From positions 71,617,289 through 71,681,288 of the forward strand of contig NC_068990.1 in the NCBI RefSeq assembly GCF_001194135.2: a stretch of 64,000 nucleotides of DNA, in the 5' to 3' direction. Below, piece by piece: positions 2,171-54,000 of the stretch. The notes under the pieces are model-generated. The model searched no databases and was not told where the DNA came from. It worked only from the letters and a program-made list of their open reading frames with translations. How positions within the stretch are numbered: the first letter of the stretch is position 1; every line of letters starts with the position of its first letter. Source of the DNA: Octopus bimaculoides (lineage: Eukaryota). Made by a program: the position numbers and the translations under genes.

Positions 2171-2862
2171 GAGTTAAGCAATACTATTGCAATTAGCCCC
2201 TTTAGCAGACCTATGATCAAAAGGGTTCCAATCATGAACACCTTATCTTTTTTTCATATTTAGTGCATCATGGATTAAATTAGCCAATGTGTATCTTTTT
2301 AAGATGGCAAAATGTGATTCAGGATGGTGTCATTTTGAAGTAAAGGCACACTGGATTGTTATCTAAGGGGCCCCATAACTCTAGGAAATTCAATGCTAAT
2401 CTATGTATGTTATGACTGTGTACTGGCATCCCCCACCACAGTGCATTGCTTTGCCCAGAGGAACCTATAATACTGTTAAGATGACCCTGATTTAAGGAAG
2501 ATATGAATGTTGTTTCTAGTAGATTAAGTAACTGTGTAGAGAGACCCCTTGGCCCTTATTAAAGATATATTGAATGCTACTGCATTGAAAACTGGTTAAA
2601 AAGAAAACAAACAAACAATTGGTTGCTGCTGCAGATGAAGATGATGATCTTTATGAAAGTGCAAATGCATTTAATTAATTCTTGATTGAGGCATGGAGCT
2701 TCAAATTTAAAGGTGAAAGGTAAGTTCTTCTCTCCAAATATTCAGACAAACTTCTCACGCATACACGCACACACAACATACTTAATTTGTTTATCTACAC
2801 TTATTTTATATGTACTGTGTGTGTAGCTGTATGTATACAGAATGTGAATGAAAGAGAGAGAA

Positions 2863-2901
<39 letters not shown>

Positions 2902-5244
2902 GTATGTAAACAAATTAGTAACTTAATATATACATGACTAATCTTCTTGATATATGTGTGTGTATGCTTGCATATATGTATGTATTTGTGTGTGTGTGTG
3001 TGTAATGCTACATTTTTGCACCTAACTCAGTGTTTCTCAAAGTGGGGACAAGATCCCTAATGGAAAGAACCCCTTAGAAATTAAAATGTGTGGAAAGACA
3101 AATTGTCATGTTTAATACATTTAAAATGACTTAAAACTTGTCCCACTAATAAGGTGAAGAAAGAAGGATTATGTAAATGCAAACACTCTTATGTTCTCAT
3201 TAATAACTCTTTCTATTTTGTGGCACAGGGCCAGAAGTTTTTGAAGAGAAGGGGAAGTTGATTACATTGAATTCAATATTCAACTGGTGCTTATTTTATC
3301 GAGCTCAACAGGATGAAAGGCCGAATCAACTTCAGCAGTATTTGAACACAGAATGTAAAGCCTGAAGAAACGCTGTTAAGCATTTTATCCAGCGTGCCAA
3401 CAAGCCTGCCACCCTCTTCTCATCTATAATGAAGAGAGGAGGAAAGGATATTGTGCAAAAAACTAATTTACAAGGAATTTTTTGATGGTAGTGGAGGTGG
3501 TGATGTAGTATTTACTAATTTGAGAACCACTGATATAGTGGGCGAAATTTTGCATAGGGGAACATCTTTTCAAGGAAAGGCTATACTAAGAGGGTTGGCT
3601 GAAAAGTTCATAGGTTGACCAAGGTATTCTCATGGAATGCAACAAAATGAGGTTTATTTTTTAACATAGTCTCTCCTTGCAAGTCCACACACTATTTCCA
3701 TTAGTGTTGTGCCTGAATCCCATTGGTAAAGAAGCTTTCATCTTGTTGGTCAAAAAAAGTCATCAACAGCAGATATGATGTATGAGTCAGACTATGTGAC
3801 TTTCTGATGCTTTTTTAAAAAAGAGATTGCTCACATGTAACAATTCTGAAGAAAACAACATTCCTCAAGAAACAGAAGTTTGTCTGTACCTTTTTAAAGA
3901 GATTTAAAGGAATTGTAAGCATGTTTGTTCCCTTTACTACATGGTTTTGGGTGTAGTTAGTACTGTATTTATTGAATGTGTCTTTAAGATGGTAGTGTAA
4001 TAAACTGAAGTAGATTTATCTGCTGTTTCAAGTTCTCCCTTCATTGTCTTGTATGTTGTTGTTGCATAATTAAGAGGCCAATATTAGACTCATATTAGCA
4101 TCTACACTTCCTTCATTATTCTTTTCTTTCATATATGTGAGTCACAGGAGAAACGACAGTCCCTCTAAAATTGGTGAGATTGATGTGAACAGCTACAGTG
4201 GAAGGGTGAGCATTCAAAGGGATGGGTTGGGAATAGACGGTATGCTCTGAATGCATGTTTCATCCACAGGAGGTGGGGGTGAGATGATGGAAACCTCTAC
4301 ATGGTTGCACTTGACTTGTTAGAAATAGCAAATAAGTCTTCCTCAAATCAAATCCTACTATCTTTAATAAGTTCACATTGGCTAAATTTGTTCTAGATAC
4401 ACTATGTCTATAAAAAAAACAAAAAAAAACAGTGTCATAGTAAAAGTAACTTTGATTATAGACCTATTCGATCGGGGTTGATTTGGAATTAACAACAGGG
4501 GTTAAACTTAAAACTAAAGCTTATCCGTTATACATTATTCCTGGCTCACAAGTGTATTGTCTCCTCTCTTTACCTTTTTTTTACCACTACTATAGTAACT
4601 TTTGTTCCATGTTGCAACCTGGGTTCATGCCACTTCTACCCAGGCATTCCCATTTTACTTCATCTCTCTCCTCAAATCATCACTCTTCTTGTGTCCAGCC
4701 CATTAGGTACCTACACTAATCCTCACGCCCAGTCCTTTCTTCCCAAGATGCTGGCTCTCTGGAATTCCCTCCCTGCTTATATATCTTTCTTGCAAATATT
4801 GATTTATAAAAGTTAAAAAGGAGTATTAATGGCATCGATCTCACCAGTCTAAAGGAGAAGTGGAGGGCTGAAGAGGCCAGGAACACTGCTCTTACACCAA
4901 ACTCAGCAAGGAAAAAAAAAAAAAAAAAGGAAAAAAAAAGGAAGAAGTGTAAATTAAACCTACCTGTAGTGAAACTATTTTATTGATTACAGAAAGATGA
5001 AAAGCAAATTTGACCTTTGTGAGATTCAAAACCAGAATGGAAAATGCATAAGTAAATACTGCAAATATTATTCTTATCTGCTGTTCTACCATTCAACCGT
5101 CTACCTGCTCTGTTTACTATTCCTGAGAGGTTTGTTGGGGTAGTCCTCAGGTACCTTCTTCATTGGGTCCTATCAGAAGCAACCGTCATTCTGGTTGGGT
5201 GATCAAGCATGACAAAATGAGATTATGGATATTATCCAACCATC

Positions 5245-6999: not shown

Positions 7000-9259
7000 T
7001 ATAACACAGCCTGTATGTAACAGGGAGACAACAGTGGATTAGAAAATATTTCACTCTGACTGTCTGACTGTTTGAAGTTTTCAAGTCATTTTACAAAACC
7101 AAGCCCCAACACATTTACCTATCTGTGCATGTATTTGTGCGCGCGCGCACACACATACATTTAATGCACTTACATAAGGAAATAGCAGAATCTTTTTAAA
7201 TAATTGGATACTTCAAAAGAAAAAGATGAAAACGAAACAAATTAATTGCTAACGATAAATTATTAGAATATCTGATTAGTTTTAAAAGTTAAAAAAAAAA
7301 AAAAAAAAAAAAAACCTTAAGCATTACTGTAAAACTGATTTAGGAAAAAAAATCTATTTTAATGTGTGTGACCTATTTGTTACTAAGCAACCAAATCTTG
7401 ACCTGCTAAGACACGCAGCAACAGTACGAGATGCGACGCTTTATTGTTGTCAGACTGCAAAAAAGTCTCAGTCCATGCTTTGTTCCGCCCACTATTATTT
7501 TCACTATTTATCTTTTGTGCCTGTCACGACCTATCTGTTTTTTTTTTGTTTTTTAACTATTAACTGATCTCGTAACCATGCCTGTATATAACTACTACTG
7601 TTAAAAGTTGGTGTCAAGGAGCCAACGTAGAAGCCTCTGCATGATCGCATGACCTGCTTAGCAATAGCAACCAAACCTACATACCCCTTCCCATTTAAGA
7701 AAGCCTTGGTTTATAGGTCCGCTCGATCAGGCCTGACTTTGGGTTAAAAATCAACAGCGTCTCTTCACGTAATTGGCTTAATGATAAAACACACACACAC
7801 ACATTGTCTGGATCTAACAGCGAGAATACGGAAAGACCCTGCCCGTCGTATAGTATAAATCAAACCCAGGTGAGGCTAATCCTCAGTCAGGTTTCTATTC
7901 CTTACAGGGTGGGTGGGGCCTCGCACCGAATCTAGAAATCGATCTTATATATTGACACAGCACAGCGTTGTAGAGCAAGACGAAAGTTCTACGTGACCCC
8001 GAGAAGCTCAGTTTCGATTCCTTAACAGGACTAATTTAGTTATCTCTACACGAATGCAGGCAACCAAATAAACCAATTCAACTAACGAAGGGGCGTTGCC
8101 GGGAAAGGTTTCATTACTCTAATTCCTTCCCTATCTGGGGGTGTTGTACAGGGAGTGTTCTCATTTGAAAATGGATTCTTATATTTGAAAGATTTTTGGA
8201 ATATATCTTAGCTACATCGAAGTGCTATTCAGTCCCACTACCCAAGACGGAAACTGAAAGAAGCCTTGTTCCCCTCTACAGCTCGATAACTGGTGTTGGT
8301 TTGTTTGCGTCCCTGTCACTATGCAGTTCGGCAAAAAAAAACAAAAAAACAAGAGGCCCATAGAATTAGTACCGGGTTTTTAAAAAAAATAAGTTCTGGG
8401 GTCCATTTTCGCTCGGCTAAACCCTTGAAGGCGGTACCCTAGCATGGCGACAATCTAATCACCAAAACAAGTTTAAAAAAAAGACACACTTATTGATATT
8501 GGAATTTATACATACATACAATATTGGTACCTGATTGATATAGTAAACCGAATTGGTTTNNNNNNNNNNNNNNNNNNNNNNNNNNNNNNNNNNNNNNNNN
8601 NNNNNNNNNNNNNNNNNNNNNNNNNNNNNNNNNNNNNNNNNNNNNNNNNNNNNNNNNNNNNNNNNNNNNNNNNNNNNNNNNNNNNNNNNNNNNNNNNNNN
8701 NNNNNNNNNNNNNNNNNNNNNNNNNNNNNNNNNNNNNNNNNNNNNNNNNNNNNNNNNNNNNNNNNNNNNNNNNNNNNNNNNNNNNNNNNNNNNNNNNNNN
8801 NNNNNNNNNNNNNNNNNNNNNNNNNNNNNNNNNNNNNNNNNNNNNNNNNNNNNNNNNNNNNNNNNNNNNNNNNNNNNNNNNNNNNNNNNNNNNNNNNNNN
8901 NNNNNNNNNNNNNNNNNNNNNNNNNNNNNNNNNNNNNNNNNNNNNNNNNNNNNNNNNNNNNNNNNNNNNNNNNNNNNNNNNNNNNNNNNNNNNNNNNNNN
9001 NNNNNNNNNNNNNNNNNNNNNNNNNNNNNNNNNNNNNNNNNNNNNNNNNNNNNNNNNNNNNNNNNNNNNNNNNNNNNNNNNNNNNNNNNNNNNNNNNNNN
9101 NNNNNNNNNNNNNNNNNNNNNNNNNTCTCTCTCTCTCTCTCTCTTTGAAGGATAATTAATAGAAAATCTAGAGATATCGGGAAATGCTTTCCTTAAATAT
9201 TAGACCTGTTAATTAGAGGTTGGAAAATTCTGTTTACTCAAAGAAAGATATTAAAAGGT

Positions 9260-9303
<44 letters not shown>

Positions 9304-9845
9304 GTATATACGAAGACAGAGATAGATAGATAAATAGATAGATAGATAGATGAGAGAGCGAGAGAGAACAATAAAAGCATTGACAACACGATATGTCTAA
9401 CAACAACAGTACCCTACGCATTCAGCAGTTCGAGGTGGGTATTTGTTACATCAGAAAGTAGAACTGTACTAGTTAGTACATACACCAACCTATGTCGGTT
9501 GGGTTGCTAGTGGATATGATAAAAACATCAACAGTACAGCGTGCCTGATGTGTACATATATATATATATTTATATTTATAGACGATCACGTTTGCTTGAG
9601 CATGAATTTTTGTATGCATGCAAAAAAGTTTTATTATCCAGTCACCCAAACAAAAGCATTACACGAACACGTAAATGCACAAGCACCTTATAATAGCATG
9701 CACATACATGCACGGAATACTACCCTCATAAACATCCCAATAGCACACAGCGAAAACATAAGTGACTCAAGGGTCGAGAGTTTCGTGTATATGTAGTATA
9801 TATCCAAACACATTTATGTTAACATATTTAAATTGATAGTCACAG

Positions 9846-9888
<43 letters not shown>

Positions 9889-10039
9889 TAACGTCGACCA
9901 CTAACGTGGACAATTAATGCGCTAGAAATAGATCACATTTTGTGTCTATTAAGACCTAAAAAGTTCTCAACATGAAATATAGCAGCATACCAAAAACGTG
10001 AGCGGGCAAGACATTTAAAATCACCTAAAAAAATCATAC

Positions 10040-10104
10040 CTTAATCCCCTGAGATTGCAGATAATATTTCTGAATCTCTTTGATTCTTTAAATGTTCTGG
10101 CCCC
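10040..10104 (-). CDS. Possible second exon of the divergent gene (GARTFKESKRFRNIICNLRGL)
   Basis: Acceptor ttatcag and donor AAG|gtatga. Only the phase-0 frame is open, matching exon 1. The acceptor lacks a good pyrimidine tract. Confidence 0.3.
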
Positions 10105-10246
10105 CTGATAATTAATCGATATTAATTAATATATTAATATATGACTAATTACCAGATCATATAATAAAATAACCTTGTATTTCTATGCTTAGTTTCATCG
10201 GTGGTGCACCAGCATGACCGCAGCCACTTGGCTGAAACACATAAAT

Positions 10247-10277
<31 letters not shown>

Positions 10278-10289
10278 TATATAAACTGC

Positions 10290-10320
<31 letters not shown>

Positions 10321-10789
10321 AAATATATAAGCAGAATATGTATACACAATATGAAAGTGTGTGTACCTGTATGCGTGCACCTCCATGCGTGTATATATGT
10401 GCCTCTGTGTGTATGTTTGTGCATCTGTATATGTGTGTGTGTCGTATGCTTAACTTGTATAGTTTAACGACAAGTACAAAACAGTTAAACGCCTATTTTA
10501 AGAAAATTAAAAAAAATAAAATAAAGTAAACAACGAAACAATTTCTGCAATAGCAAACTGTGCAGAAACTGAAGCAACAGACAAATCTATGATTACCTTT
10601 TGGAAGTATTGATGAAACTAAGCATAGAAATACAAGGTTATTTTCTATTTTAAATGATAATGAAACGAAAAGTCAGCATATGTTCACAAATAATAATAAC
10701 GATGATAATAAATAATGATAATGATTCGTCCTTAAGGCAATAAGAACATTGTACCCGTTTGGGTGTGTTTATTGGTGTTACTTTCAGAT

Positions 10790-11005
10790 ATCTTGTTTAG
10801 CGTTAGGGTCAGCTTAGACCGAGCAGACCTATGATCAAAAGTTTTCCAGATACGACCACCCTGTCTTTTTAAATTTTTTTTTATCTAGACGTGTATATAA
10901 AACTAAAATAACCAATATGTCCTTCATTTTTTAAAGTTAGAAGGCTATGATTTAAGGGAACTTTGGTTGCTATTTCTAGCACATCGAGCAACCACGTATT
11001 GCCTC
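10790..11005 (+). repeat. Dispersed ~220-bp repeat family (gagcagacctatgatcaaa ... gctatttctagca)
   Basis: Recurs at about 4300-4500(-), 7640-7760(-), 19630-19740, 36340-36520, 40435-40600, 58130-58350, 59500-59720(-) and 63005-63170. Class not determined. Confidence 0.7.
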
Positions 11006-11131
11006 CTATCTGGCCTGAATTTTGGTTGTGTGTGTGTGTAATGTTCGGTAATGTTTTTAATACCCATAATTTAAAATACAAATAATTTGTGCACGCGCGC
11101 GCGAAAATAGTAATCAGTTACTAAATTGTAC

Positions 11132-11184
<53 letters not shown>

Positions 11185-11275
11185 CACACACACATGTACA
11201 CACATAAACATACATTCGTACACACACACATATATTATGTAGTATTAATTGTGAGGTAGTTTTAGTAATTCTTAC

Positions 11276-11494
11276 CACATTACGAAGGTGGGCAAACTCG
11301 GCGTCGGAACCGTTCTTGGAAGGCGACCTGCCTACAACAAGGTTGATAAAGACACCATCAACAATGTAAATACAGTCTTGATCGCCACTGCCGTATTTTT
11401 CTCTCAAAGCATCTGTAAAAGATTTCTTGTAAACATTGTTTTTCTCTGATTCCAAAGAAGCGATCTGACGTGATATTTCAACACAAGTTTCCAT
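11276..11494 (-). CDS. First coding exon of an unidentified gene divergent from Clc (METCVEISRQIASLESEKNNVYKKSFTDALREKYGSGDQDCIYIVDGVFINLVVGRSPSKNGSDAEFAHLRNV)
   Basis: 73 open codons of non-repetitive, protein-like composition. ATG context aagATGg and donor GTG|gtaaga (phase 0). The other two frames are closed. I do not recognise the family. Confidence 0.6.
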
Positions 11495-11930
11495 CTTTAG
11501 TGCATCGCTTGTTTTTGTAAACAATTCAGAGAGTTGAAGCAATAGCTAACCCAGGAGTTGTTATGAAATATTTACAAGTCACCTCACGTTTAGCGTGTGC
11601 TATATTTAGACTTTGTTTTGATGGAGTGTCTTGATGCACTAATACCTAACTTCATGCTAAATTTCAGTTTTTGGTGCCATAGTCAATGATATAATAATGA
11701 ACATTTCACTGCTATTATTATTTTTTTATGGTAAATCTCTTAAATATAATAGTGTGTAATTTTCAATCAATAAAATTCTATATTTTGGATGTTTCTATGG
11801 ACGCATTCGAAAAATGTGTTAAGTGCATCATGATGTTAGATAATAAGACCAATCAGAACACTTTGCCGAAAACCGACGGTAGATTACGGAAACAGCCGAT
11901 TGTTTGTCTGACGTATTTCATTCTAACAAA
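11495..11930. promoter_or_regulatory. Putative bidirectional promoter and 5' UTR interval between the divergent ORF and Clc
   Basis: Head-to-head ATGs 437 bp apart in repeat-free, CpG-retaining sequence. TSS positions cannot be read from sequence alone. Confidence 0.5.
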
Positions 11931-12078
11931 ATGGCTGATTTCGAGAATTTCGAGTCTGCTGGTGATGGAAATGTCGAAGAAGACCCTGCTGCTGACTTTT
12001 TAGCTCGTGAACAGACAGAACTCGCAGGTCTTGAAGACGACAACTTTCCCGTTGCAGATGCCTCTCAGCCAACTGCAG
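11931..12078 (+). CDS. Clc: Clathrin light chain, coding exon 1 (MADFENFESAGDGNVEEDPAADFLAREQTELAGLEDDNFPVADASQPTA-G)
   Basis: ATG in context aacaaaATGG. Contains the conserved CLC N-terminal motif EEDPAADFLAREQ-x-x-LAGLEDD. Ends at donor CAG|gtacgt, phase 1. Confidence 0.97.
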
Positions 12079-12585
12079 GTACGTAGCTGTTATAGTTGTT
12101 TAAAACTGACCGAATTAAGATCTTCCAGTTACTCCCCTCAAAATGTACGCCCATTATTTTATGTTACATCTCTGAAATATATAAATATTCGATCAATTTA
12201 GTCATTCGTCTATATTATTGTCTTGACTGTTCAATCGTAAATGAATTAATATTCTCTAAATTCTTATTCAAAATGTTATCGAGAAAAAGAACACTAAAAT
12301 CTGAAACAACCTGTCGGATGGCGTGATGCAAGTTCAATGTATGAGTATATATATTTGTAGCGGATGATCGAAAATAGTCGTTGTCATTCATTGACTATCA
12401 TTGAATTGCTTGTAATATTGATCTGCCTGTTGAAAATTAGTGTGCTATTTCAGTAACATACTGAACTAAAAGCTTATTAGTAAAAAGTTATTCGCCTCTA
12501 AATAGATACCTCACTTCGTGCCTGAAACCCATCCCATACATTTCTTATATTCTGATAAGTAACACACAACACACACACGTAGATC

Positions 12586-12621
<36 letters not shown>

Positions 12622-13287
12622 NNNNNNNNNNNNNNNNNNNNNNNNNNNNNNNNNNNNNNNNNNNNNNNNNNNNNNNNNNNNNNNNNNNNNNNNNNNNNNN
12701 NNNNNNNNNNNNNNNNNNNNNNNNNNNNNNNNNNNNNNNNNNNNNNNNNNNNNNNNNNNNNNNNNNNNNNNNNNNNNNNNNNATTAGTTATAATTTTTTC
12801 CCCCGGAAATTCCCTCTTCAGAGAACGATGTATTTATTCCTGATTAACATAACTCTTTCCATCGATTTTTACCAACTTTGCTAATATGAGTTAGCTTTCT
12901 TTAATTTTACTTCCTCGTTCAATGATGTGTGCCGCCTCGTCACTTCCTGATGTGTGCTTGTGTATAAAGCTAATTTACAACTAGATAAAATACAAAAAAG
13001 AAAAAAGATCATGCGAGCACAATCATCTCCACCATTATCTTCAAGAGCAAGGAAGTCGAGTTAAAAAAAAGATGCGAGTTGTTAAAGCTGAAGCTGGTTC
13101 AAATGATACAAAATTACCCTTTCTCTTTTAAGTGTGGCACGTTCCTACAATTTTGGTAGGTAATTAATTAGATAACAATTTTTTTTTTCTCGTCGAATTT
13201 CTCCTTATCAGACTTCTGATGGGACCTGTACATTAGTCTCTAACTCCTTGAACTTTTTACTGACCACACACACATGTATATATATAG

Positions 13288-13338
13288 GTCTTGAAGATGA
13301 CAACCCCCCCGTTGAAGATGTTACTCTTCCAACCACAG
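13288..13338 (+). other. Candidate duplicated 51-nt exon (G-LEDDNPPVEDVTLPTT-G) inside a diverged copy of the exon 1/intron 1 junction
   Basis: 39/51 identical to 12028-12078 with no indels. Retains donor CAG|gtacgt and is preceded by TACTGAC and tatatag. Phase 1-1. The polypyrimidine tract is poor. Confidence 0.45.
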
Positions 13339-13781
13339 GTACGTAGCAGTTAAAGTTGTTCAAAACTGACCGAAATAACTTGTGCACTAACTCTTCTCAC
13401 AATAATAAGCTCATCATTTTCTGCCTCTCTCTGAAATGGTCTGACATTCCCCTGTCCTTTTGATATTCAGATAGGATATTGACTGTCAGTGAATTAATAT
13501 TTACTAATTCCTACTTAAAATGTTCTTATATAAACGAGTGAAAAAGAAGAAAAAAAAAGGACTAAACCCTGATTCAACCTGCCAAAAGGTGCGATATATT
13601 TTCTTATTTTGGGCATGATCGAAAAGCCAGCATACCATTCATTGACTAGTATTAGATTATTTGTATTTTGCTATCTGTTGGAAATTAATGTAACCACTTT
13701 ACCGTCATATCGAATAGAAATGTATTTTGTGAAAAATTATTAGCTTCTACATAGTTATCGGTTCCCTGTCCAACCTATGTA

Positions 13782-14645
13782 CGAGGTGTGATCAACAAGT
13801 ATCCGGACTGTTGCCATAGTAACGAAGCTAAAGCATGCTGAGTGAAGCCACTTAACACAGATTGACCTTGAAGTCTGCTGTGCATGCGCACTAAGTTTTA
13901 ACATTCTAGCTCACTTCTGTTTACAGCTGTGCTCGGAAGGAAGTTGTGTATCATGTGATCGTCGCAGTGACCATGACAGAGAAAGTTGTCATGGCGATAC
14001 TTGCTCAGAAGCCTAGAAAAAGCTGCAGAAAGCCTATGAGTTGCGCACAAGTGGTTCAGACGTCTCCAAGATGGCTGAAAAAATGTTGCTAGTGATGAAC
14101 GTTCTGGGAGACCTGCAACCAGCAGAACTGAGAAAAACGTTGTATATATGTGTGCAGCTGTGAGGGGAAATTGCCGAATCACCATACATGAGTTATTAGA
14201 GGATGTGCAGATTAGTTAGGGTTCAGTCACTGTCACTGAATATTTGGGTATGAGATGCATGTCTGCCAAGTTTGTGCCAAAACTACTTTCAGTTGACCAA
14301 AAAGATACTTGGGGTTTTAGTTGCACAAGATCTCCTTGATTGTGTTGAGAATGACGAAAACCTTTTGGAAACTTTGCATACGCCTCTGAGCAGGTATCAC
14401 CAAGCTTTTGGCAAAATTTGATGCAGATTCTCTCCTCAACTTTCTCTGTCATAGTCAATGCAATGATCACATGCTACACACCTTCCTTCCAAGCACTGCT
14501 GTAAACAGCAGAAATGAGCTAGAGCTTTAAAATTTAGTGTGCATGCAAACAGAATCCAAGGTCCATCTGTGCATAGCAGCTTTACTCTGTGTGCTTTAGT
14601 TTTGTTACTATGGCAACAGTCCAGATGCATATTGATCAGACCACG
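13782..14645. mobile_element. Non-autonomous mariner derivative built from two left ends (long ~208-bp inverted arms)
   Basis: TA at 13780-81 and 14646-47. Ends CGAGGTGTGATCAA and TTGATCAGACCACG share CTGTTGCCATAGTAAC. A decayed transposase HTH lies on + (DERSGRP, ITIHEL, SAKFVPKLL) and a second N-terminus on - (MTEKVEERICIKFCQKLG). Confidence 0.88.
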
Positions 14646-14769
14646 TATCCTGATATAATATCTGCACAGATAACTACATGTTTTTTTTTTTCATGCCTGC
14701 TTCACTATACTGGCATAAGTTGGAGAGACCACCTCTAGCTCCGTGTTTTGTCATCTGTTGTGGTCTTTT

Positions 14770-18634: not shown

Positions 18635-18705
18635 CTGATGGGTTTAACACCTTTGAAGAATCAAATGCAACAGTTAATGGTTTGAGTGATGCAGATGTGC
18701 CACAG
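18635..18705 (+). CDS. Clc: Clathrin light chain, coding exon 2 (ADGFNTFEESNATVNGLSDADVPQ)
   Basis: Acceptor ttctattgtag and donor CAG|gtatgc. 71 nt, converting phase 1 to phase 0 exactly as exons 1 and 3 require. Low-conservation acidic linker. Confidence 0.85.
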
Positions 18706-20198: not shown

Positions 20199-20319
20199 AC
20201 TAATGGACCTACAGATGGAAGTGGTTATGCTGCTATAGCTCAAGTTGATAAACACCATCGAGAACCTGAGAAAATCAAGTTGTGGAGAGAAGAACAAAAG
20301 AAACGGCTTGAACACAAGG
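20199..20319 (+). CDS. Clc: Clathrin light chain, coding exon 3 (TNGPTDGSGYAAIAQVDKHHREPEKIKLWREEQKKRLEHK)
   Basis: Acceptor cttgcttgcag and donor AAGG|gttagg. Matches the CLC NGPTD..YAAI.QVD...EPE.I..WREEQ..RLE motif. 121 nt, phase 0 to 1. Confidence 0.96.
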
Positions 20320-22977: not shown

Positions 22978-23089
22978 ATGCTGAAGAAGAAAATAAGAAG
23001 GAAATATGGCGTGAAGCTGCAAAGAAAGAGCTTGAAGATTGGTTGAAAAATCAGGCAGAACAGCTTATTAAGACCAAAGAAAACAACCG
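22978..23089 (+). CDS. Clc: Clathrin light chain, coding exon 4 (DAEEENKKEIWREAAKKELEDWLKNQAEQLIKTKENNR)
   Basis: Acceptor gattgtag and donor CCG|gtaata. Heavy-chain-binding helix with W..AKKELEDW...Q.EQL.K.K.NNR. 112 nt, phase 1 to 2. Confidence 0.97.
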
Positions 23090-25380: not shown

Positions 25381-25419
25381 AGCTGCTGCCGCAGCCGAGC
25401 TTGCAGACATCACTTGTGG
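25381..25419 (+). CDS. Clc: Putative alternative 39-nt cassette exon of clathrin light chain (R-AAAAAELADITC-G)
   Basis: Acceptor tctcattgttcttccacag and donor TGG|gtaaga. Symmetric phase 2-2 and open in frame. Local GC/CpG retention within a CpG-poor intron. Confidence 0.75.
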
Positions 25420-29781: not shown

Positions 29782-29808
29782 GCATGCAGAGGCTTTGGAG
29801 AAAAAAAA
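29782..29808 (+). CDS. Clc: Putative alternative 27-nt microexon of clathrin light chain (HAEALEKK-K)
   Basis: Branch-like tactcac, a ~35-nt polypyrimidine tract ending ttcctctacag, and consensus donor AAA|gtaagt. Symmetric phase 2-2 and open in frame. Confidence 0.72.
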
Positions 29809-31548
29809 GTAAGTATTCAGTGTAGGTAATTTTGCAGTTTTATCATGCAGTATATACATATGCTGCAACTCTTTAGGGATAAATTTTTTTCTCATCTCTA
29901 TATTCTAATAAATTAATAATAAAAAAAAAATATTTTGAATTAGCCATAAAATTCTGTAATTTAAACATTTACTGCCACTATGGATTAGCTTTCTTTTCTG
30001 GATTGATTATTTTCTGTAGATGCTTTTAGTGTAAATACTGTTTAATATAGCTTTGCTTTTTAAGTCTCAGGAAAACAGTTATCCCAACTGTATGGGTTAT
30101 AAGTATCTCTTGATTTTGGTCATAAAATTTCCTATAAAGCCTAATACTGGACTTAATTGTTGTGATGGTTGTTGTTCAATTTAGCTTTTTCCCTTTGCTT
30201 TTCTTTAATAAAAAAAAATCAGTTTCCAACATTTGCATNNNNNNNNNNNNNNNNNNNNNNNNNNNNNNNNNNNNNNNNNNNNNNNNNNNNNNNNNNNNNN
30301 NNNNNNNNNNNNNNNNNNNNNNNNNNNNNNNNNNNNNNNNNNNNNNNNNNTTAATGTTTGGGTTTTTTTCAACAATTATTTTCATTGAATTATTTTAAAT
30401 TTTAAAAGATTTTCATTTATCAAAATGTTTGACTTTACATTTGTACCAGTTTTAAAGTAATTATTAAATGTGTAAATCTTATGACAATATATAATCAAAA
30501 TGTAATTCTTTCTCTCTGGGTTGATTCCAAATGACAGAGCAGAAAGGCATCTCCAAAGTGAGACTATATCACTGTCTACTATGAACATATATACACCATG
30601 CTTGAGTGAATGTTGAATATTTAATACACATGACTACCTTTAGTAGAAATTTTGTTGTAGTGGGACACACCTACATATTTCAGATAAACTTATTAACCTA
30701 CACTAAGTCAACATTGATATCTTACATGAAACATCATCATTTACTGTTTGTTGATAGTTGTCACTGCCTATCCATATGAAATATCACAAACCTCTGCTGG
30801 CTTCTGTCCTCAGTTGCTGTCGTTATTGCTATCAAATCTTCTCGTATTATGTATCTTGGTCAAGGTTTACCCTGATTTCTTCCACTTATACAGTATTTGT
30901 CTTGGCAACTGAGTTACCTCCATTCTTTGGACCTACCTAAAATTATAGAGGTCTCATTGCACCAATATCTCTCTTCCTTATAAGGAATTTGGTTTTCTTT
31001 AGGATGAGCCTTTTCATGTGATGTTCATATTTTTGTGTTGGGCGTCTCATCATGAATGCATGCTGTTTATTTTATCTTTGTAGTATATTGTCCATGCCTA
31101 TGATCTGTAGAATAAGGTGGATAATACTACTGCTATGTGTACTTCACATTTAACTTGGACTGATACATACTTGTAGTTCTTCTCTCTTTCTCAGTCCCCT
31201 GAATTCTGAGCTAACTTTGTTCAACCCGCAATCTAGTTTGACATTGAGTCTATCAGCATTTCTCATAATACTACCGAGAGAGGTAAAATATCTTGCCTCC
31301 ACCAGCTCTGACCTTTTAATAATGTTGGAATCTGGTTGTGCTTCTTGGTTAAAGTTGGAATTTAATTAATAAAAAACTTCAATATTCTGGATGTTAATTT
31401 TCAAGCTGACCTCTGTGGTTGCACCGTCAAAAACCCCCATATTCTGCTTATTCTTTCACACTATGGACGACAAAACATGATCATCAAACATTTTTCTTAC
31501 TAATATGTGTGTTACTGATATGTAGAGCTTTGAGATCTAACACCTTAA

Positions 31549-34051: not shown

Positions 34052-34223
34052 GGCACAAGAAGAAGCAAGCATGAAGGACCGTGAAGAGAGCATTGCTGGT
34101 CAAGAATGGGAGAAAATCTGTCGGCTTTGTGACTTCAACCCTAAGCATTCCAAAAACACAAAAGACGTGTCTCGTATGAGATCAATATTGCTACAGTTGA
34201 AGCAAACGCCTCTGGTTCGCTGA
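34052..34223 (+). CDS. Clc: Clathrin light chain, terminal coding exon (AQEEASMKDREESIAGQEWEKICRLCDFNPKHSKNTKDVSRMRSILLQLKQTPLVR*)
   Basis: Acceptor ctttcccttatgtag, phase 2. Conserved CLC C-terminus EWE.I..LCDFNPK.SK..KDVSRMRS.L..LKQ.PL.R. TGA at 34221-34223. Confidence 0.98.
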
Positions 34224-51021: not shown

Positions 51022-54000
51022 CTGCAATACAATCAGTGTTTCACTAATTAACATTTAAGAAATAATTTAGTATTTCTTTCTTACACTTGTACATAACAAA
51101 TATACCAATATGATGAGAAAAAAAGAAAAAAAAATGAAATTCATATATTATTTTTCCCTGCTGGTATGAAAACAATTAAGATTTAATGTATTCAATTATT
51201 AAGGCTGAAAATTTTTCAGATAAACTCATTGAGATGATATCTCTTATGAAATACACTTCAGCTATGTGTTTCAAGTAATTTTGAAAATAATTGAGAATTT
51301 GTAAAGATTTAGTAAAACTGTCTTTTCTTTATTATTGAGCTGATGTTTGTAAAATTACCTTAACAAAAGCAATTTCAATAAAATTACAATGGAAACATTT
51401 TTATTTAAATGTGAACAATTTAAAACAAAACCTTTTGTTTCATTGACTCAAGGGTGATCTCAAAATGGTTAAATGAAAATATAAAGAGAATACAACACTC
51501 CAGAAATCTCTATAGAAATTTTACTTTATTTAAAGCTGGCAGTAATTTTAAAGAAAGAGCCCGAATCAGCTTTTATTATTTATACTGATTTGTTAATCAG
51601 CAGTTTTTGCATTTAGTTCATTGCTCATTTATCTTTTATTTAAAGACCATTGATTGAAATGTTTAAGAAAATTTTATAAAATGTGAGAAAACAANNNNNN
51701 NNNNNNNNNNNNNNNNNNNNNNNNNNNNNNNNNNNNNNNNNNNNNNNNNNNNNNNNNNNNNNNNNNNNNNNNNNNNNNNNNNNNNNNNNNNNNNNNNNNN
51801 NNNNNNNNNNNNNNNNNNNNNNNNNNNNNNNNNNNNNNNNNNNNNNNNNNNNNNNNNNNNNNNNNNNNNNNNNNNNNNNNNNNNNNNNNNNGTGTATACT
51901 CTTTTACTCTTTTACTTAGTTTCAGTCATTCGACTCTGGCCATGCTGGGGCACCATTTTGAAGGGCGTAGAGGAACAAACCAAGCCCAGTTCTTATTTTT
52001 GAAGTCTGGTACATTTTCTATTAGTCTGTTTTGTGGACCTGCTAAGTTATGGGGGTGTAAACAAACCAATACTGGCTGTCAAGCAGCGGAGGAGGGGGGG
52101 ACATGAAGACACACACACATACACACGTGTGTGCAACAGGCTTCTGCATATTTTTCATCAACAAAAGTTCCTCATAAGGCATTAGTTGGCCTGGGGCTAT
52201 ATTAGAAGACACTTCTCCCAAGGTATCACATAGTAGGACTGAACACAAAACCATGTGATAGCCATGTTCACAACATATATACACACACATACATACATAA
52301 ACAAAATAGTTCATACATATGTACAAGATTTATCCTCCATCACACACGTCCACAAGCGCACAGGTACATACCTATATAGACAGACCCATGCACATGCACA
52401 CACATATACACACACAGAATCAGATTTAAATAATTATAATAATGCTTTATATTCATCAAGTGTCACAAATATTAAAGAATATTTAGAGTTACTTTCCCAA
52501 ACGGATGTATAATCACAGAAGTTAACTAATGTTTCTGCACAAGAAAGACACACGACTGACTGCCTCAGTCTATGAGGCTAGAACCAGGATCCACTTCTTA
52601 ACAGTAAAAGAGGTTTGCAGTAGAAGGAACATCCAAAAGTAACAAACAACTAGCACTCCATTGGTTATGATGATGAGAGTTCCAATTGATCTGATCAACA
52701 GAGCAGTCTGCTTGTAAAATTAATGAGCAAGTGGCTGAGCACTCCACAGACACGTGTACCCTTAATGTAGTTCTTAATGAGAGAGAGAGAGAGAGAGCTA
52801 ACATAGAGTCACTCCATTTACTAAAAACAGCAGCTAAATTTATTTCATATCATAAATGGATCTCCAACAGTTTTGATGATGAGCACTCAGTTATTTGAGC
52901 ACCTGAACTTCCTGCTCAGTGAATTACCTTTTAGGTAGCTTAGTATTCTCCAAAAGTGTGTACCATTAATGTAATTTTCAAACAGAACCAGCATGAGACA
53001 AGGCTGGACTTTTGAATCACTGGTACAATCTACCTGACAGGCTTCTGCACAGCTTTCATTTATGCACACAGCTTACAGGTCAAGGTGAGGAACCTATGGT
53101 AAATGACACAAGCAAAAATGCCATGCAGTGACATCAGACTAATGACTTCATGATTGAGAAGTGAACTTTTTAACTAGCCATGCCAGGTCCATACTTTATC
53201 ATCTTACAAAACAATATGTTGGATAGTGTAGTCCTAGATATTCTATATCTGAAAAGACAGGTTGGTCATAATTGGCATACCTTTTATCATAGGAGTGATC
53301 TTGCAGCTGAACAAAACAACAGGAGTGTAGAAATATATTGGACAGTGAAGAAAACATAACATGTCAACCACAGAAGACTGCAGTTCAGTGAATGTCAGAA
53401 TGTACATCAACTAAGAGCTGACATAATATATTTGGATCTATGGATTGAAGATCATCCTATTGTATTTTCCAGTATCTAACTCAAAGTGTATAGTGTAAAC
53501 ATGTAGTATAAACATTCAAACATCTTTGCAAATCCAGCTGCATTTTACATGGAACTTTTGGTCCTCCAAAGTCATCTTGGTGTGTAAGCCAACCTATCTT
53601 TTTTTTTTTTTTTTTTTTTTTTTGTAAATTTTGGTCTGAACAATTCGAGTTGTATGCAACATAATATGATAGTTATTTGATTGGATATCTATGTGGCATA
53701 GATCTCCTTGATCAGAGGTTACACAACTAGTAACATCAACAAAAGAATATCTATGCAGTCCTCAGCCTAAAAGAAATAATCAGAATAACCAATCTTAAGA
53801 AAAGAATATTTGTCAGTATAGTCTTGGCTACCACACTATCTGAGGAGAGGACTGGATGGTCAGGGCTGAAACATCTTTGATCAAAGATCAGCTCAATCAG
53901 AGCTGAATTGGTGCTAAATAACAACACAAAAACATCAGTAACATCAACAAAGATAACTTTACTACAACACCTATGACAACAATAATAACAATGAGGCATG

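What the first reader, a model, noticed from the sequence alone, without database searches (positions are those of the whole stretch)
12026..13760. Tandem duplication of the Clc exon 1/intron 1 junction that may have created a new in-frame exon
Seen: 13286-~13760 is a diverged copy of 12026-~12510, with matching blocks such as aaactgaccgaa, gtgaattaatatt, gatgatcgaaaa and cattcattgacta. The copy starts at a natural AG|GT inside exon 1 and keeps the donor gtacgt. It is preceded by a branch-like TACTGAC and tatatag, giving a 51-nt phase 1-1 unit (GLEDDNPPVEDVTLPTT versus the original GLEDDNFPVADASQPTA). Inclusion would duplicate the acidic GLEDD tail next to the conserved HIP1/HIP1R-binding segment. 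Caveat: the 51 nt (39/51 identical, six amino-acid changes) are no better conserved than the adjacent intron, and the pyrimidine tract is weak. It may be a neutrally decaying copy or a low-inclusion nascent exon.
Basis: partly seen in the sequence, partly recalled or inferred. Interest (0 to 1): 0.72.

Follow-up and report, generated by a model that had tools for sequence, protein, structure and literature searches.

The report
Duplication-born alternative exon in octopus clathrin light chain
A piece of the first exon and first intron of the Octopus bimaculoides clathrin light chain gene was copied into intron 1 long ago, and the copy is a 51-base in-frame exon already included in public RefSeq isoforms, so the finding is real but ordinary.

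Summary
Window 12026-12508 and 13286-13757 are diverged copies (Smith-Waterman 142 against 22 +/- 2.8 for shuffles). Homology starts exactly at an AG|GT inside exon 1. The window is O. bimaculoides CM046610.1.

The protein I spliced with the 51-nt unit (13288-13338) is 100% identical to RefSeq XP_014774093.1 (isoform X3). X1 and X2 also include the exon and X4 skips it.

The copy is no assembly artefact. It lies at the same place in gapless O. vulgaris and O. sinensis loci, which carry a further 333-bp tandem copy. O. vulgaris has annotated isoforms with 0, 1 or 2 extra units. It is also in Argonauta hians as a 45-nt annotated exon with the same breakpoint. It is missing from the cuttlefish protein.

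The N gap (12622-12782) is intronic. Its flanks are collinear with both gapless loci, where the interval is about 359 bp of TA arrays and unique sequence with no exon copy.

Two caveats remain. The only transcript contig I could reach skips the exon. In one unidentified octopodid the orthologous copy has lost the acidic motif. Selection on the coding sequence is therefore weak or lineage-specific.

Verdict: an old, duplication-derived cassette exon that adds a second GLEDD module. Already annotated; low novelty.

The parts
11931..12078 (+). Clathrin light chain exon 1 (ATG at 11931; ends in phase 1; donor CAG|gtacgt)
   Evidence: Gene model; tblastn to a CLTA sequence written from memory; Pfam PF01086 E=1.2e-46 for the spliced product
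12026..12508 (+). Parent copy (c1) of the duplicated segment: the last 53 nt of exon 1 plus about 430 nt of intron 1
   Evidence: Local alignment; shuffle statistics
12565..12621 (.). (CA)n/(TA)n microsatellite running into the assembly gap
12622..12782 (.). Assembly gap (161 N) inside intron 1, between the two copies. It corresponds to about 359 bp in O. vulgaris, made of TA arrays and unique sequence with no exon copy
12783..13264 (+). Right part of the spacer. It has no homology to c1, to sequence downstream of c2, or to anything else in the window. It is orthologous to O. vulgaris L004 4046-4520 (93%)
13258..13264 (+). Branch-point-like TACTGAC, 24 nt upstream of the acceptor AG. Conserved in O. 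vulgaris c2 and c3, changed to CACTCGC in L008
13265..13285 (+). (CA)n(TA)n microsatellite that forms the left junction and the weak acceptor tract (pyrimidine 0.52, T 0.28)
13286..13757 (+). Diverged copy (c2) of 12026-12508
13288..13338 (+). 51-nt phase 1-1 cassette exon encoding (G)LEDDNPPVEDVTLPTT. Its acceptor AG at 13286-13287 comes from the codons GCA|GGT of exon 1, and its donor GTACGT at 13339-13344 is inherited. Included in RefSeq isoforms X1-X3 and skipped in X4. CM046610.1 coordinates are about 71630576-71630626
13339..13378 (+). Donor-proximal intron block, 36/40 identical to 12079-12118, so better kept than the exon itself. The c1 version is 45/45 identical between O. bimaculoides and L008
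13780..14647 (.). Inverted-repeat element (arms of about 210 bp, 82% complementary) lying 22 nt after the end of c2 homology. Also present in O. vulgaris and O. sinensis
   Evidence: its ORFs gave no Pfam hit
18635..18705 (+). Clc exon 2, joined to 12078 in the skipping form and to 13338 in the inclusion form
20199..20319 (+). Clc exon 3
22978..23089 (+). Clc exon 4
25381..25419 (+). Alternative exon (AAAAAELADITCG)
29782..29808 (+). Alternative exon (HAEALEKKK)
34052..34223 (+). Clc last coding exon with stop codon

Best explanation
In an ancestor of incirrate octopods, about 0.5 kb spanning the last 53 nt of clathrin light chain exon 1 and the start of intron 1 was copied into intron 1, roughly 1.3-1.45 kb downstream. 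The left breakpoint fell at an AG|GT inside the coding sequence (codons GCA|GGT) and next to a CA/TA microsatellite. The copy therefore brought its own AG acceptor, 51 nt of phase 1-1 coding sequence and the original GTACGT donor. The spliceosome can use it as a cassette exon. Skipping gives the ancestral 207-aa type of protein. Inclusion inserts 17 residues (GLEDDNPPVEDVTLPTT), a second acidic, proline-rich module. That module sits directly after the conserved 22-residue light-chain consensus (EEDPAADFLAREQTELAGLEDD), which in mammals binds HIP1/HIP1R and the heavy-chain knee. In the O. vulgaris/O. sinensis lineage a 333-bp unit carrying the exon duplicated again, allowing one, two or three modules. 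Shown here: the duplication, its breakpoint, the frame, the splice-site sequences, identity to annotated isoforms, presence in four further species, and a transcript that skips the exon. Inferred: actual inclusion in O. bimaculoides mRNA (from annotation only), and any effect on clathrin assembly or HIP1R/actin coupling.
For: Duplication. Gene model, and 100% identity over 224 aa of the inclusion product to XP_014774093.1. Isoforms X1 and X2 include the exon and X4 skips it. The window is identical to CM046610.1. The copy sits at the same place in gapless O. vulgaris and O. sinensis loci, with an extra 333-bp copy whose units are about 96-97% identical and whose exons are identical in O. vulgaris. 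O. vulgaris has annotated products with 0, 1 and 2 extra units. The two-unit products cannot have been projected from other species' proteins. That annotation took its alternative forms from PASA updates built on Iso-Seq and RNA-seq (PMC10700109). Argonauta hians has a 45-nt exon (GLEDDTPVEAVQSDS) with AG and GT, phase 1-1, the same breakpoint and the upstream TGTATATATA. It is annotated in GAB1610892.1. The Octopus-Argonauta alignment around c2 covers only the exon plus about 10 nt on each side, and the first 19 bases (AG plus GGTCTTGAAGATGAYA) match at 18/19, synonymous sites included, while the flanks do not align. A c2-specific intron block (TTAAyATTTACTAATTC) lies collinear in Argonauta. 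The unit is absent from the cuttlefish protein, from 2.3 kb of a sepiid-like intron 1, and from other molluscs. Role of the consensus sequence: PMC8712872.
Against: I could not see a single read or transcript that joins 12078^13288 or 13338^18635. The only reachable transcript contig (L007, Logan SRR16213286, 99% identical to the window's exons) joins 12078^18635, so it skips the exon. No Logan-derived member of the relevant protein clusters carries the unit. The acceptor tract is weak (pyrimidine 0.52, T 0.28, against 0.48-0.84 for the gene's other acceptors). Coding constraint is not demonstrable within Octopodidae. O. bimaculoides and O. vulgaris differ by 3 nt, 2 of them nonsynonymous. In the unidentified octopodid L008 the orthologous unit reads GLKDYKTPVAVITLPTV, with donor GTGTAT and a degraded branch motif, and it is no better conserved than its flanks (78% against 86-88%). 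O. sinensis c3 has a 1-nt deletion. How the Argonauta model was built is unknown to me.
Confidence: 0.8

Rival explanations
1. The copy is a decaying pseudo-exon. It is spliced in only as low-level noise, or the annotated isoforms are prediction or projection artefacts, and the inserted peptide has no selected function.
For: The orthologous copy in L008 has lost the acidic motif, the consensus donor and the branch motif. Exon identity is no higher than flank identity among octopodids. The paralogous exon (76%) is less conserved than the adjacent intron (90%). The one reachable transcript skips it. The pyrimidine tract is weak. An open 17-codon frame is expected by chance about 44% of the time (my arithmetic: (61/64)^17).
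Against: AG, GT, phase and the GLEDD codons are retained in O. bimaculoides, in O. vulgaris (twice), in O. sinensis and in Argonauta, although the Argonauta flanks no longer align. The length difference in Argonauta is 6 nt, so the frame is preserved. Four independent annotations include the exon, and O. vulgaris two-unit isoforms come from a transcript-driven step.
Confidence: 0.15
2. The Argonauta exon and the Octopus exon arose by independent duplications, so the Octopus copy is much younger than the Octopus-Argonauta split.
For: In Octopus, about 430 nt of intron homology between c1 and c2 is still detectable. In Argonauta, c1 and c2 share nothing beyond the exon, and orthologous intron 1 aligns between the two genera for only about 140 nt. 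The GAA codon shared by O. bimaculoides and Argonauta is probably homoplasy, because O. vulgaris and L008 have GCA.
Against: Both have the identical breakpoint at AG|GT, and both have a TG/TA microsatellite immediately upstream. Argonauta c2 keeps GGT CTT as in Octopus, whereas Argonauta c1 has GGA CTG, so it is not a recent copy of Argonauta c1. A collinear c2-type block TTTACTAATTC lies downstream in Argonauta (weak, z about 2.3).
Confidence: 0.1
3. The duplicate is an assembly artefact: a falsely duplicated haplotype, or a misjoin at the gap.
For: An N gap lies between the copies, and the O. bimaculoides assembly is short-read based with 8 gaps in this window.
Against: The copies are 24% diverged in the exon and carry many indels in the intron. 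The same arrangement is found in gapless O. vulgaris and O. sinensis loci, in a Logan short-read contig of another octopodid, and in Argonauta. The gap flanks are collinear with those loci.
Confidence: 0.01

Closest known systems
Exons born by tandem exon duplication and used in alternative splicing (the class treated in PMC8373072; the classic surveys by Kondrashov & Koonin 2001 and Letunic, Copley & Bork 2002 are cited from my own knowledge)
   Same: A neighbouring, sequence-similar, frame-compatible exon arose by local DNA duplication, with homologous flanking intron, and generates alternative isoforms.
   Different: Most described cases are whole internal exons spliced in a mutually exclusive way (substitutions). 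Here only the 3' third of the first, start-codon-bearing exon was copied. The acceptor was recruited from an AG|GT inside the coding sequence. The new exon is additive: it is a cassette that produces an internal peptide repeat, and the copies are separated by a non-homologous spacer.
Vertebrate clathrin light chain splice variants (the neuronal inserts of CLCa and CLCb; PMC8712872)
   Same: Short in-frame cassette exons in a clathrin light chain gene give several isoforms. This octopus gene also has two cassette exons (25381-25419, 29782-29808) at the same protein position as the vertebrate inserts.
   Different: The vertebrate inserts lie near the C-terminal third and are not copies of a neighbouring exon. 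The exon studied here lies at the N-terminus, directly after the HIP-binding consensus, a position where I know of no vertebrate splice variation.
Exonisation of intronic sequence (for example Alu exonisation)
   Same: A new cassette exon appears inside an intron with weak splice signals, and inclusion is presumably partial.
   Different: The sequence is not a transposable element. It was coding before, and it arrived with a proven donor and an in-frame reading frame.

Membership tests
Clathrin light chain (Pfam PF01086) | Full-length match to the Clathrin_lg_ch profile above the curated cut-off | tested here: met
   P0036, identical to the window's spliced product, scores E=1.2e-46 and 159.9 bits against a cut-off of 22, covering residues 2-222
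Clathrin light chain (Pfam PF01086) | Conserved N-terminal 22-residue consensus sequence (the HIP1/HIP1R and heavy-chain knee binding segment) | tested here: met
   EEDPAADFLAREQTELAGLEDD aligns to EEDPAAAFLAQQESEIAGIEND of a human CLTA sequence written from memory. It is invariant or nearly so across molluscs. Its role is described in PMC8712872. Binding itself was not tested.
Duplication-derived alternative exon | Significant similarity between the exon and a neighbouring exon, extending into the flanking intron (a DNA-level duplication) | tested here: met
   Score 142 against 22 +/- 2.8 for shuffles; the intron part alone scores 96 against 21.7; exon 39/51 identical
Duplication-derived alternative exon | Frame-compatible length, with AG and GT splice sites | tested here: met
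   51 nt, phase 1-1, tatatAG|GT...CAG|GTACGT
Duplication-derived alternative exon | Presence of the exon in mature mRNA, with both inclusion and skipping forms | tested here: inconclusive
   Skipping was seen directly in transcript contig L007. Inclusion is seen only through annotated products: XP_014774089.1/092.1/093.1, O. sinensis XP_ models, O. vulgaris CAI97291xx and A. hians GAB1610892.1. The O. vulgaris alternative forms come from PASA with Iso-Seq and RNA-seq. No reads could be inspected.
Duplication-derived alternative exon | Orthologous exon retained in other species | tested here: met
   Intact in O. vulgaris (two copies), O. sinensis and A. hians; degraded in L008; absent in the cuttlefish protein
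Mutually exclusive duplicated exons | Exactly one of the homologous exons is present in each isoform | tested here: not met
   Exon 1 carries the start codon and is in every isoform. The inclusion isoforms contain both GLEDD units, and O. vulgaris isoforms contain three
Assembly artefact (false duplication) | Copies nearly identical, and absent from independent assemblies | tested here: not met
   Copies are 76% identical in the exon with many indels. They are present in four other assemblies or contigs

The most novel reading that the evidence does not exclude
Octopods have evolved a copy-number-variable acidic 'GLEDD' module directly after the HIP1/HIP1R- and heavy-chain-knee-binding consensus of clathrin light chain. 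There are one to three units, set by repeated local duplication and chosen by alternative splicing. Regulated inclusion (for example in neurons) would tune clathrin lattice assembly or coupling to actin. This would be an N-terminal counterpart, evolved independently, of the vertebrate neuronal inserts.
Probability: 0.12. Interest if true: 0.5.

Novelty: already known. Interest (0 to 1): 0.27.

Why it matters
The exon and the isoforms that contain it have been in RefSeq and UniProt since the first O. bimaculoides annotation, so nothing new is discovered about the gene's products. What this analysis adds is modest. It gives the origin of the exon: a partial copy of the first exon whose acceptor was recruited from an AG|GT within coding sequence beside a microsatellite. 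It gives a minimum age, since the exon is shared with Argonauta. It shows a second round of duplication in O. vulgaris and O. sinensis, and decay in another octopodid. Together these make a clean textbook example of exon birth by local duplication. It would interest clathrin specialists only if inclusion turned out to be regulated and to alter HIP1R binding or lattice assembly.

Tried and rejected
1. The first protein search, with exon 1 plus the unit, returned only short read-through ORFs of exon 1 from genomic contigs. It did not even list the RefSeq isoforms.

2. A junction-peptide search meant to catch transcript fragments found no candidates, because of the word-index limit.

3. Exact look-ups failed for P0036, P0037, P0044 and the window's own exon 1 ORF, since only the longest product per gene is on record. 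As a result the cuttlefish locus could not be fetched. Absence in decapodiforms rests on one annotated protein and on 2.3 kb of intron in L001.

4. I planned an exact look-up of hypothetical inclusion ORFs carrying L007's 5' extension (sequences prepared). I did not run it. The cluster listings and the hit list already showed no Logan member with the unit.

5. I searched for homology between the spacer (12509-13264) and the sequence downstream of c2, to test a simple 1.26-kb tandem unit. None was found. The spacer is not repeated elsewhere in the window, so its origin is unresolved: either a later insertion, or loss of its second copy.

6. A Pfam scan of ORFs in the inverted-repeat element 13780-14647 gave nothing. 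My impression that it is mariner-derived is unsupported.

7. A paper search for the SRA run numbers, to identify L001, L007 and L008, found nothing. A search for 'clathrin light chain' plus 'octopus' found no relevant paper.

8. No dN/dS test was attempted, because 15-17 codons give no statistical power.
Full report
**What is there.** The window is identical, base for base over 28,293 nt, to Octopus bimaculoides GCA_001194135.2 chromosome CM046610.1 (locus L003; window coordinate = L003 coordinate + 8930).

It carries the clathrin light chain gene on the + strand. The exons are:
- exon 1, 11931-12078
- exon 2, 18635-18705
- exon 3, 20199-20319
- exon 4, 22978-23089
- last exon, 34052-34223
- two alternative exons, 25381-25419 and 29782-29808

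The spliced product matches Pfam PF01086 at E = 1.2e-46.

The Smith-Waterman scores, against composition-preserving shuffles, are:
- whole block: 142 against 21.9 +/- 2.8
- intron part alone: 96 against 21.7
- distal intron alone: 59 against 21.9
- the 325 nt upstream of the two start points: 20 against 20.2, so no similarity

Homology therefore starts at the AG|GT itself. The two 51-nt units are 39/51 identical, with six replacements and two synonymous changes. The first 40 intron bases are 36/40 identical. The donor CAG|gtacgt is the same in both copies, and TACTGAC sits 24 nt before the acceptor AG.

One correction is needed. The copies are not head to tail. About 780 bp, including the gap, lies between them, and this spacer has no counterpart after copy 2 or anywhere else in the window.

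**The gap.** The N run at 12622-12782 lies in the intron between the copies, so reading frame is not an issue. It is still open in the chromosome-scale version.

Its flanks are collinear with the gapless loci of O. vulgaris and O. sinensis. For O. vulgaris (L004), 2190-3686 corresponds to 11127-12621 at 93%, and 4046-4686 corresponds to 12784-13428 at 93%. O. sinensis (L005) gives the same picture. In O. vulgaris the missing interval is 359 bp: two (TA)n arrays and unique sequence, with no further exon copy. The order and orientation of the two sides are therefore right, and the true spacing of the copies is probably nearer 1.45 kb than 1.26 kb.

**Is the copy an exon?** I spliced exon 1 + 13288-13338 + exons 2-5 and searched the protein.

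The best hit is 100% identical over all 224 residues. It is XP_014774093.1, 'clathrin light chain B isoform X3 [Octopus bimaculoides]'. Isoforms X1 (XP_014774089.1) and X2 (XP_014774092.1) also contain GLEDDNPPVEDVTLPTT. X4 (XP_014774094.1) lacks it. The 'possible new exon' is thus an annotated alternative exon.

O. sinensis RefSeq models and the O. vulgaris annotation contain the orthologous unit, GLEDDNPPVADVTPPTT. O. vulgaris has products with none, one or two such units. The two-unit products cannot have been projected from another species' proteins. The O. vulgaris paper states that alternative forms were added by PASA updates from Iso-Seq and RNA-seq alignments (PMC10700109). RefSeq isoform diversity likewise follows experimental support (PMC12605758), but I could not inspect the evidence for these particular models.

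The only transcript sequence I could reach directly is a 962-nt Logan contig from SRR16213286 (L007), 99% identical to the window's exons. It joins 12078 directly to 18635, so it skips the exon. No Logan-derived protein fragment with the unit exists in the relevant clusters. Inclusion in O. bimaculoides mRNA is therefore inferred from annotation, not seen.

**Other species.**
- O. vulgaris and O. sinensis carry the parent at 3096 and copies at 4543 and 4876 of their loci.
- The extra copy is a 333-bp tandem duplication corresponding to window 13094-13428.
- Its two units are about 96-97% identical, and the exons with their splice sites are identical in O. vulgaris.
- In O. sinensis the third copy has one C fewer in a C run, which is either a frameshift or a long-read homopolymer error.
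- Argonauta hians (L006) has exon 1 at 3001 and, 3 kb downstream, a 45-nt phase 1-1 exon: cattAG|GTCTTGAAGATGATACCCCTGTGGAAGCCGTTCAGTCTGACTCAG|GTATGT. It encodes GLEDDTPVEAVQSDS and is part of the annotated protein GAB1610892.1.
- The cuttlefish Acanthosepion pharaonis protein, other molluscan light chains, and 2.3 kb of intron 1 in a sepiid-like contig (L001) lack the unit.

**Same event in Argonauta and Octopus?** Several features argue for a single old duplication:
- Both copies begin at the same AG|GT.
- Both are preceded by TGTATATATA...TAG.
- Argonauta copy 2 keeps GGT CTT as in Octopus, while Argonauta exon 1 has GGA CTG.
- About 120-155 nt downstream of the donor, both have the copy-2 form TTAAyATTTACTAATTC, where copy 1 reads TTAATATTCTCTAAATTC (weak on its own, z about 2.3).

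One observation sits uneasily with this. In Octopus, 430 nt of intron homology between the paralogues survives, whereas orthologous intron 1 aligns between the two genera for only about 140 nt. Faster turnover in Argonauta, or some gene conversion in Octopus, could explain it. I give independent origins about 10%.

**Constraint.** Between Octopus and Argonauta, the alignment around copy 2 consists of the exon plus about 10 nt on each side. The flanks no longer align. The first 19 bases, from the AG through GLEDD, match at 18/19, synonymous positions included. The length difference is 6 nt. That pattern is what an exon shows, and the purine-rich GAAGAUGA stretch may act as a splicing enhancer that offsets the weak acceptor tract. 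This last point is inference.

Within Octopodidae there is no sign of coding constraint. O. bimaculoides and O. vulgaris differ at 3 of 51 nt, two of them replacements. An unidentified octopodid (L008, Logan SRR11869384, 84% identical to the window, an outgroup to the two Octopus species) has the orthologous copy. There it reads GLKDYKTPVAVITLPTV, with donor GTGTAT and the branch motif changed. Its exon (78%) and donor-proximal block (70%) are less conserved than its flanks (86-88%). Most of these changes are derived on that lineage when copy 1 is used as outgroup.

The simplest reading is a real but lightly constrained cassette exon encoding a disordered acidic linker, which has been lost or is being lost in at least one lineage.

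**Mechanism.**

*Shown:*
- A local DNA duplication has its left breakpoint at an AG|GT inside codons GCA|GGT and next to a CA/TA microsatellite.
- The copy supplies the AG, a 51-nt phase 1-1 body and the parental donor.

*Inferred:*
- The TA/CA tract and TACTGAC serve as a weak polypyrimidine tract and branch site.
- The well-kept 40-nt block after the donor may help recognition. It is 36/40 identical between the paralogues, and the copy-1 version is 45/45 identical between O. bimaculoides and L008.

*Protein consequence:*
- Inclusion inserts 17 residues with five acidic and no basic side chains directly after the 22-residue consensus. In mammals that consensus binds HIP1/HIP1R and the heavy-chain knee (PMC8712872).
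- The unit repeats only the last five residues of that consensus (GLEDD), so a second complete HIP site is unlikely.
- A longer acidic spacer is the more probable effect. No functional test was possible.

**Comparison with known kinds.** This is a member of the well-known class of exons born by local exon duplication. It differs from the usual mutually exclusive pairs in three ways:
- It is additive.
- It derives from part of a first exon.
- Its acceptor was recruited from within coding sequence.

It is distinct from the vertebrate neuronal inserts, which lie elsewhere in the protein. The octopus gene does, however, have two cassette exons at that vertebrate position.

**Verdict.** The exon is old rather than nascent, and it is already annotated. 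It is not an artefact. Novelty is low: only the origin and the evolutionary history appear not to have been described (one search found no literature). Interest 0.27.

Noticed in passing
window 25381-25419 and 29782-29808: Two short cassette exons of the same gene (AAAAAELADITCG, 39 nt; HAEALEKKK, 27 nt) lie between exon 4 and the last exon. They insert after ...KTKENNR, the same protein position as the vertebrate neuronal CLCa/CLCb inserts. RefSeq and O. vulgaris isoforms use them in all combinations, and transcript contig L007 includes the first.
   Followed up: partly
L004 4353-5019 and L005 4353-5019 (O. vulgaris, O. sinensis): A further 333-bp tandem duplication carries the cassette exon. 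The units are about 96-97% identical, and O. vulgaris has annotated isoforms with two extra units. The O. sinensis third copy has a 1-nt deletion in a C run (50 nt), either a frameshift or an assembly error.
   Followed up: yes
L008 about 3560-3760 (Logan SRR11869384, unidentified octopodid): The orthologous copy 2 has lost the acidic motif (GLKDYKTPVAVITLPTV). Its donor is GTGTAT and the branch motif is changed. The exon diverged more than its flanks, which suggests lineage-specific decay.
   Followed up: partly
window 12079-12123: The first 45 nt of intron 1 are 45/45 identical between O. bimaculoides and the L008 species, although the region overall is 84% identical. The paralogous block after copy 2 (13339-13378) is 36/40 identical to it. 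This may be an intronic splicing or regulatory element.
   Followed up: no
window 13780-14647: An element with long inverted arms (about 210 bp, 82% complementary) sits 22 nt after the end of copy 2. It is shared with O. vulgaris and O. sinensis. Its ORFs gave no Pfam hit, so its class is undetermined.
   Followed up: partly
window about 8931-11542, minus strand: A leucine-rich-repeat protein gene lies head to head with Clc. Its 5' coding end is about 400 bp from the Clc ATG, which suggests a shared bidirectional promoter region. The block 11271-11426 is 81% identical to a sepiid-like contig (L001 561-716), probably the first coding exon of that gene.
   Followed up: partly
L007 1-114: The first 114 nt of the transcript contig do not map next to exon 1 in the window. 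They give the called ORF an N-terminal extension (MGRWLAALILSYK). This is either an upstream 5' UTR exon elsewhere or a chimeric contig.
   Followed up: no
window 8560-9125, 30239-30350, 39790-39847, 41204-41841, 44655-45612, 49494-50236, 51695-51891: Seven further assembly gaps are in the window. TA/CA microsatellites flank the gene at 11125-11228 and 12565-12621.
   Followed up: no
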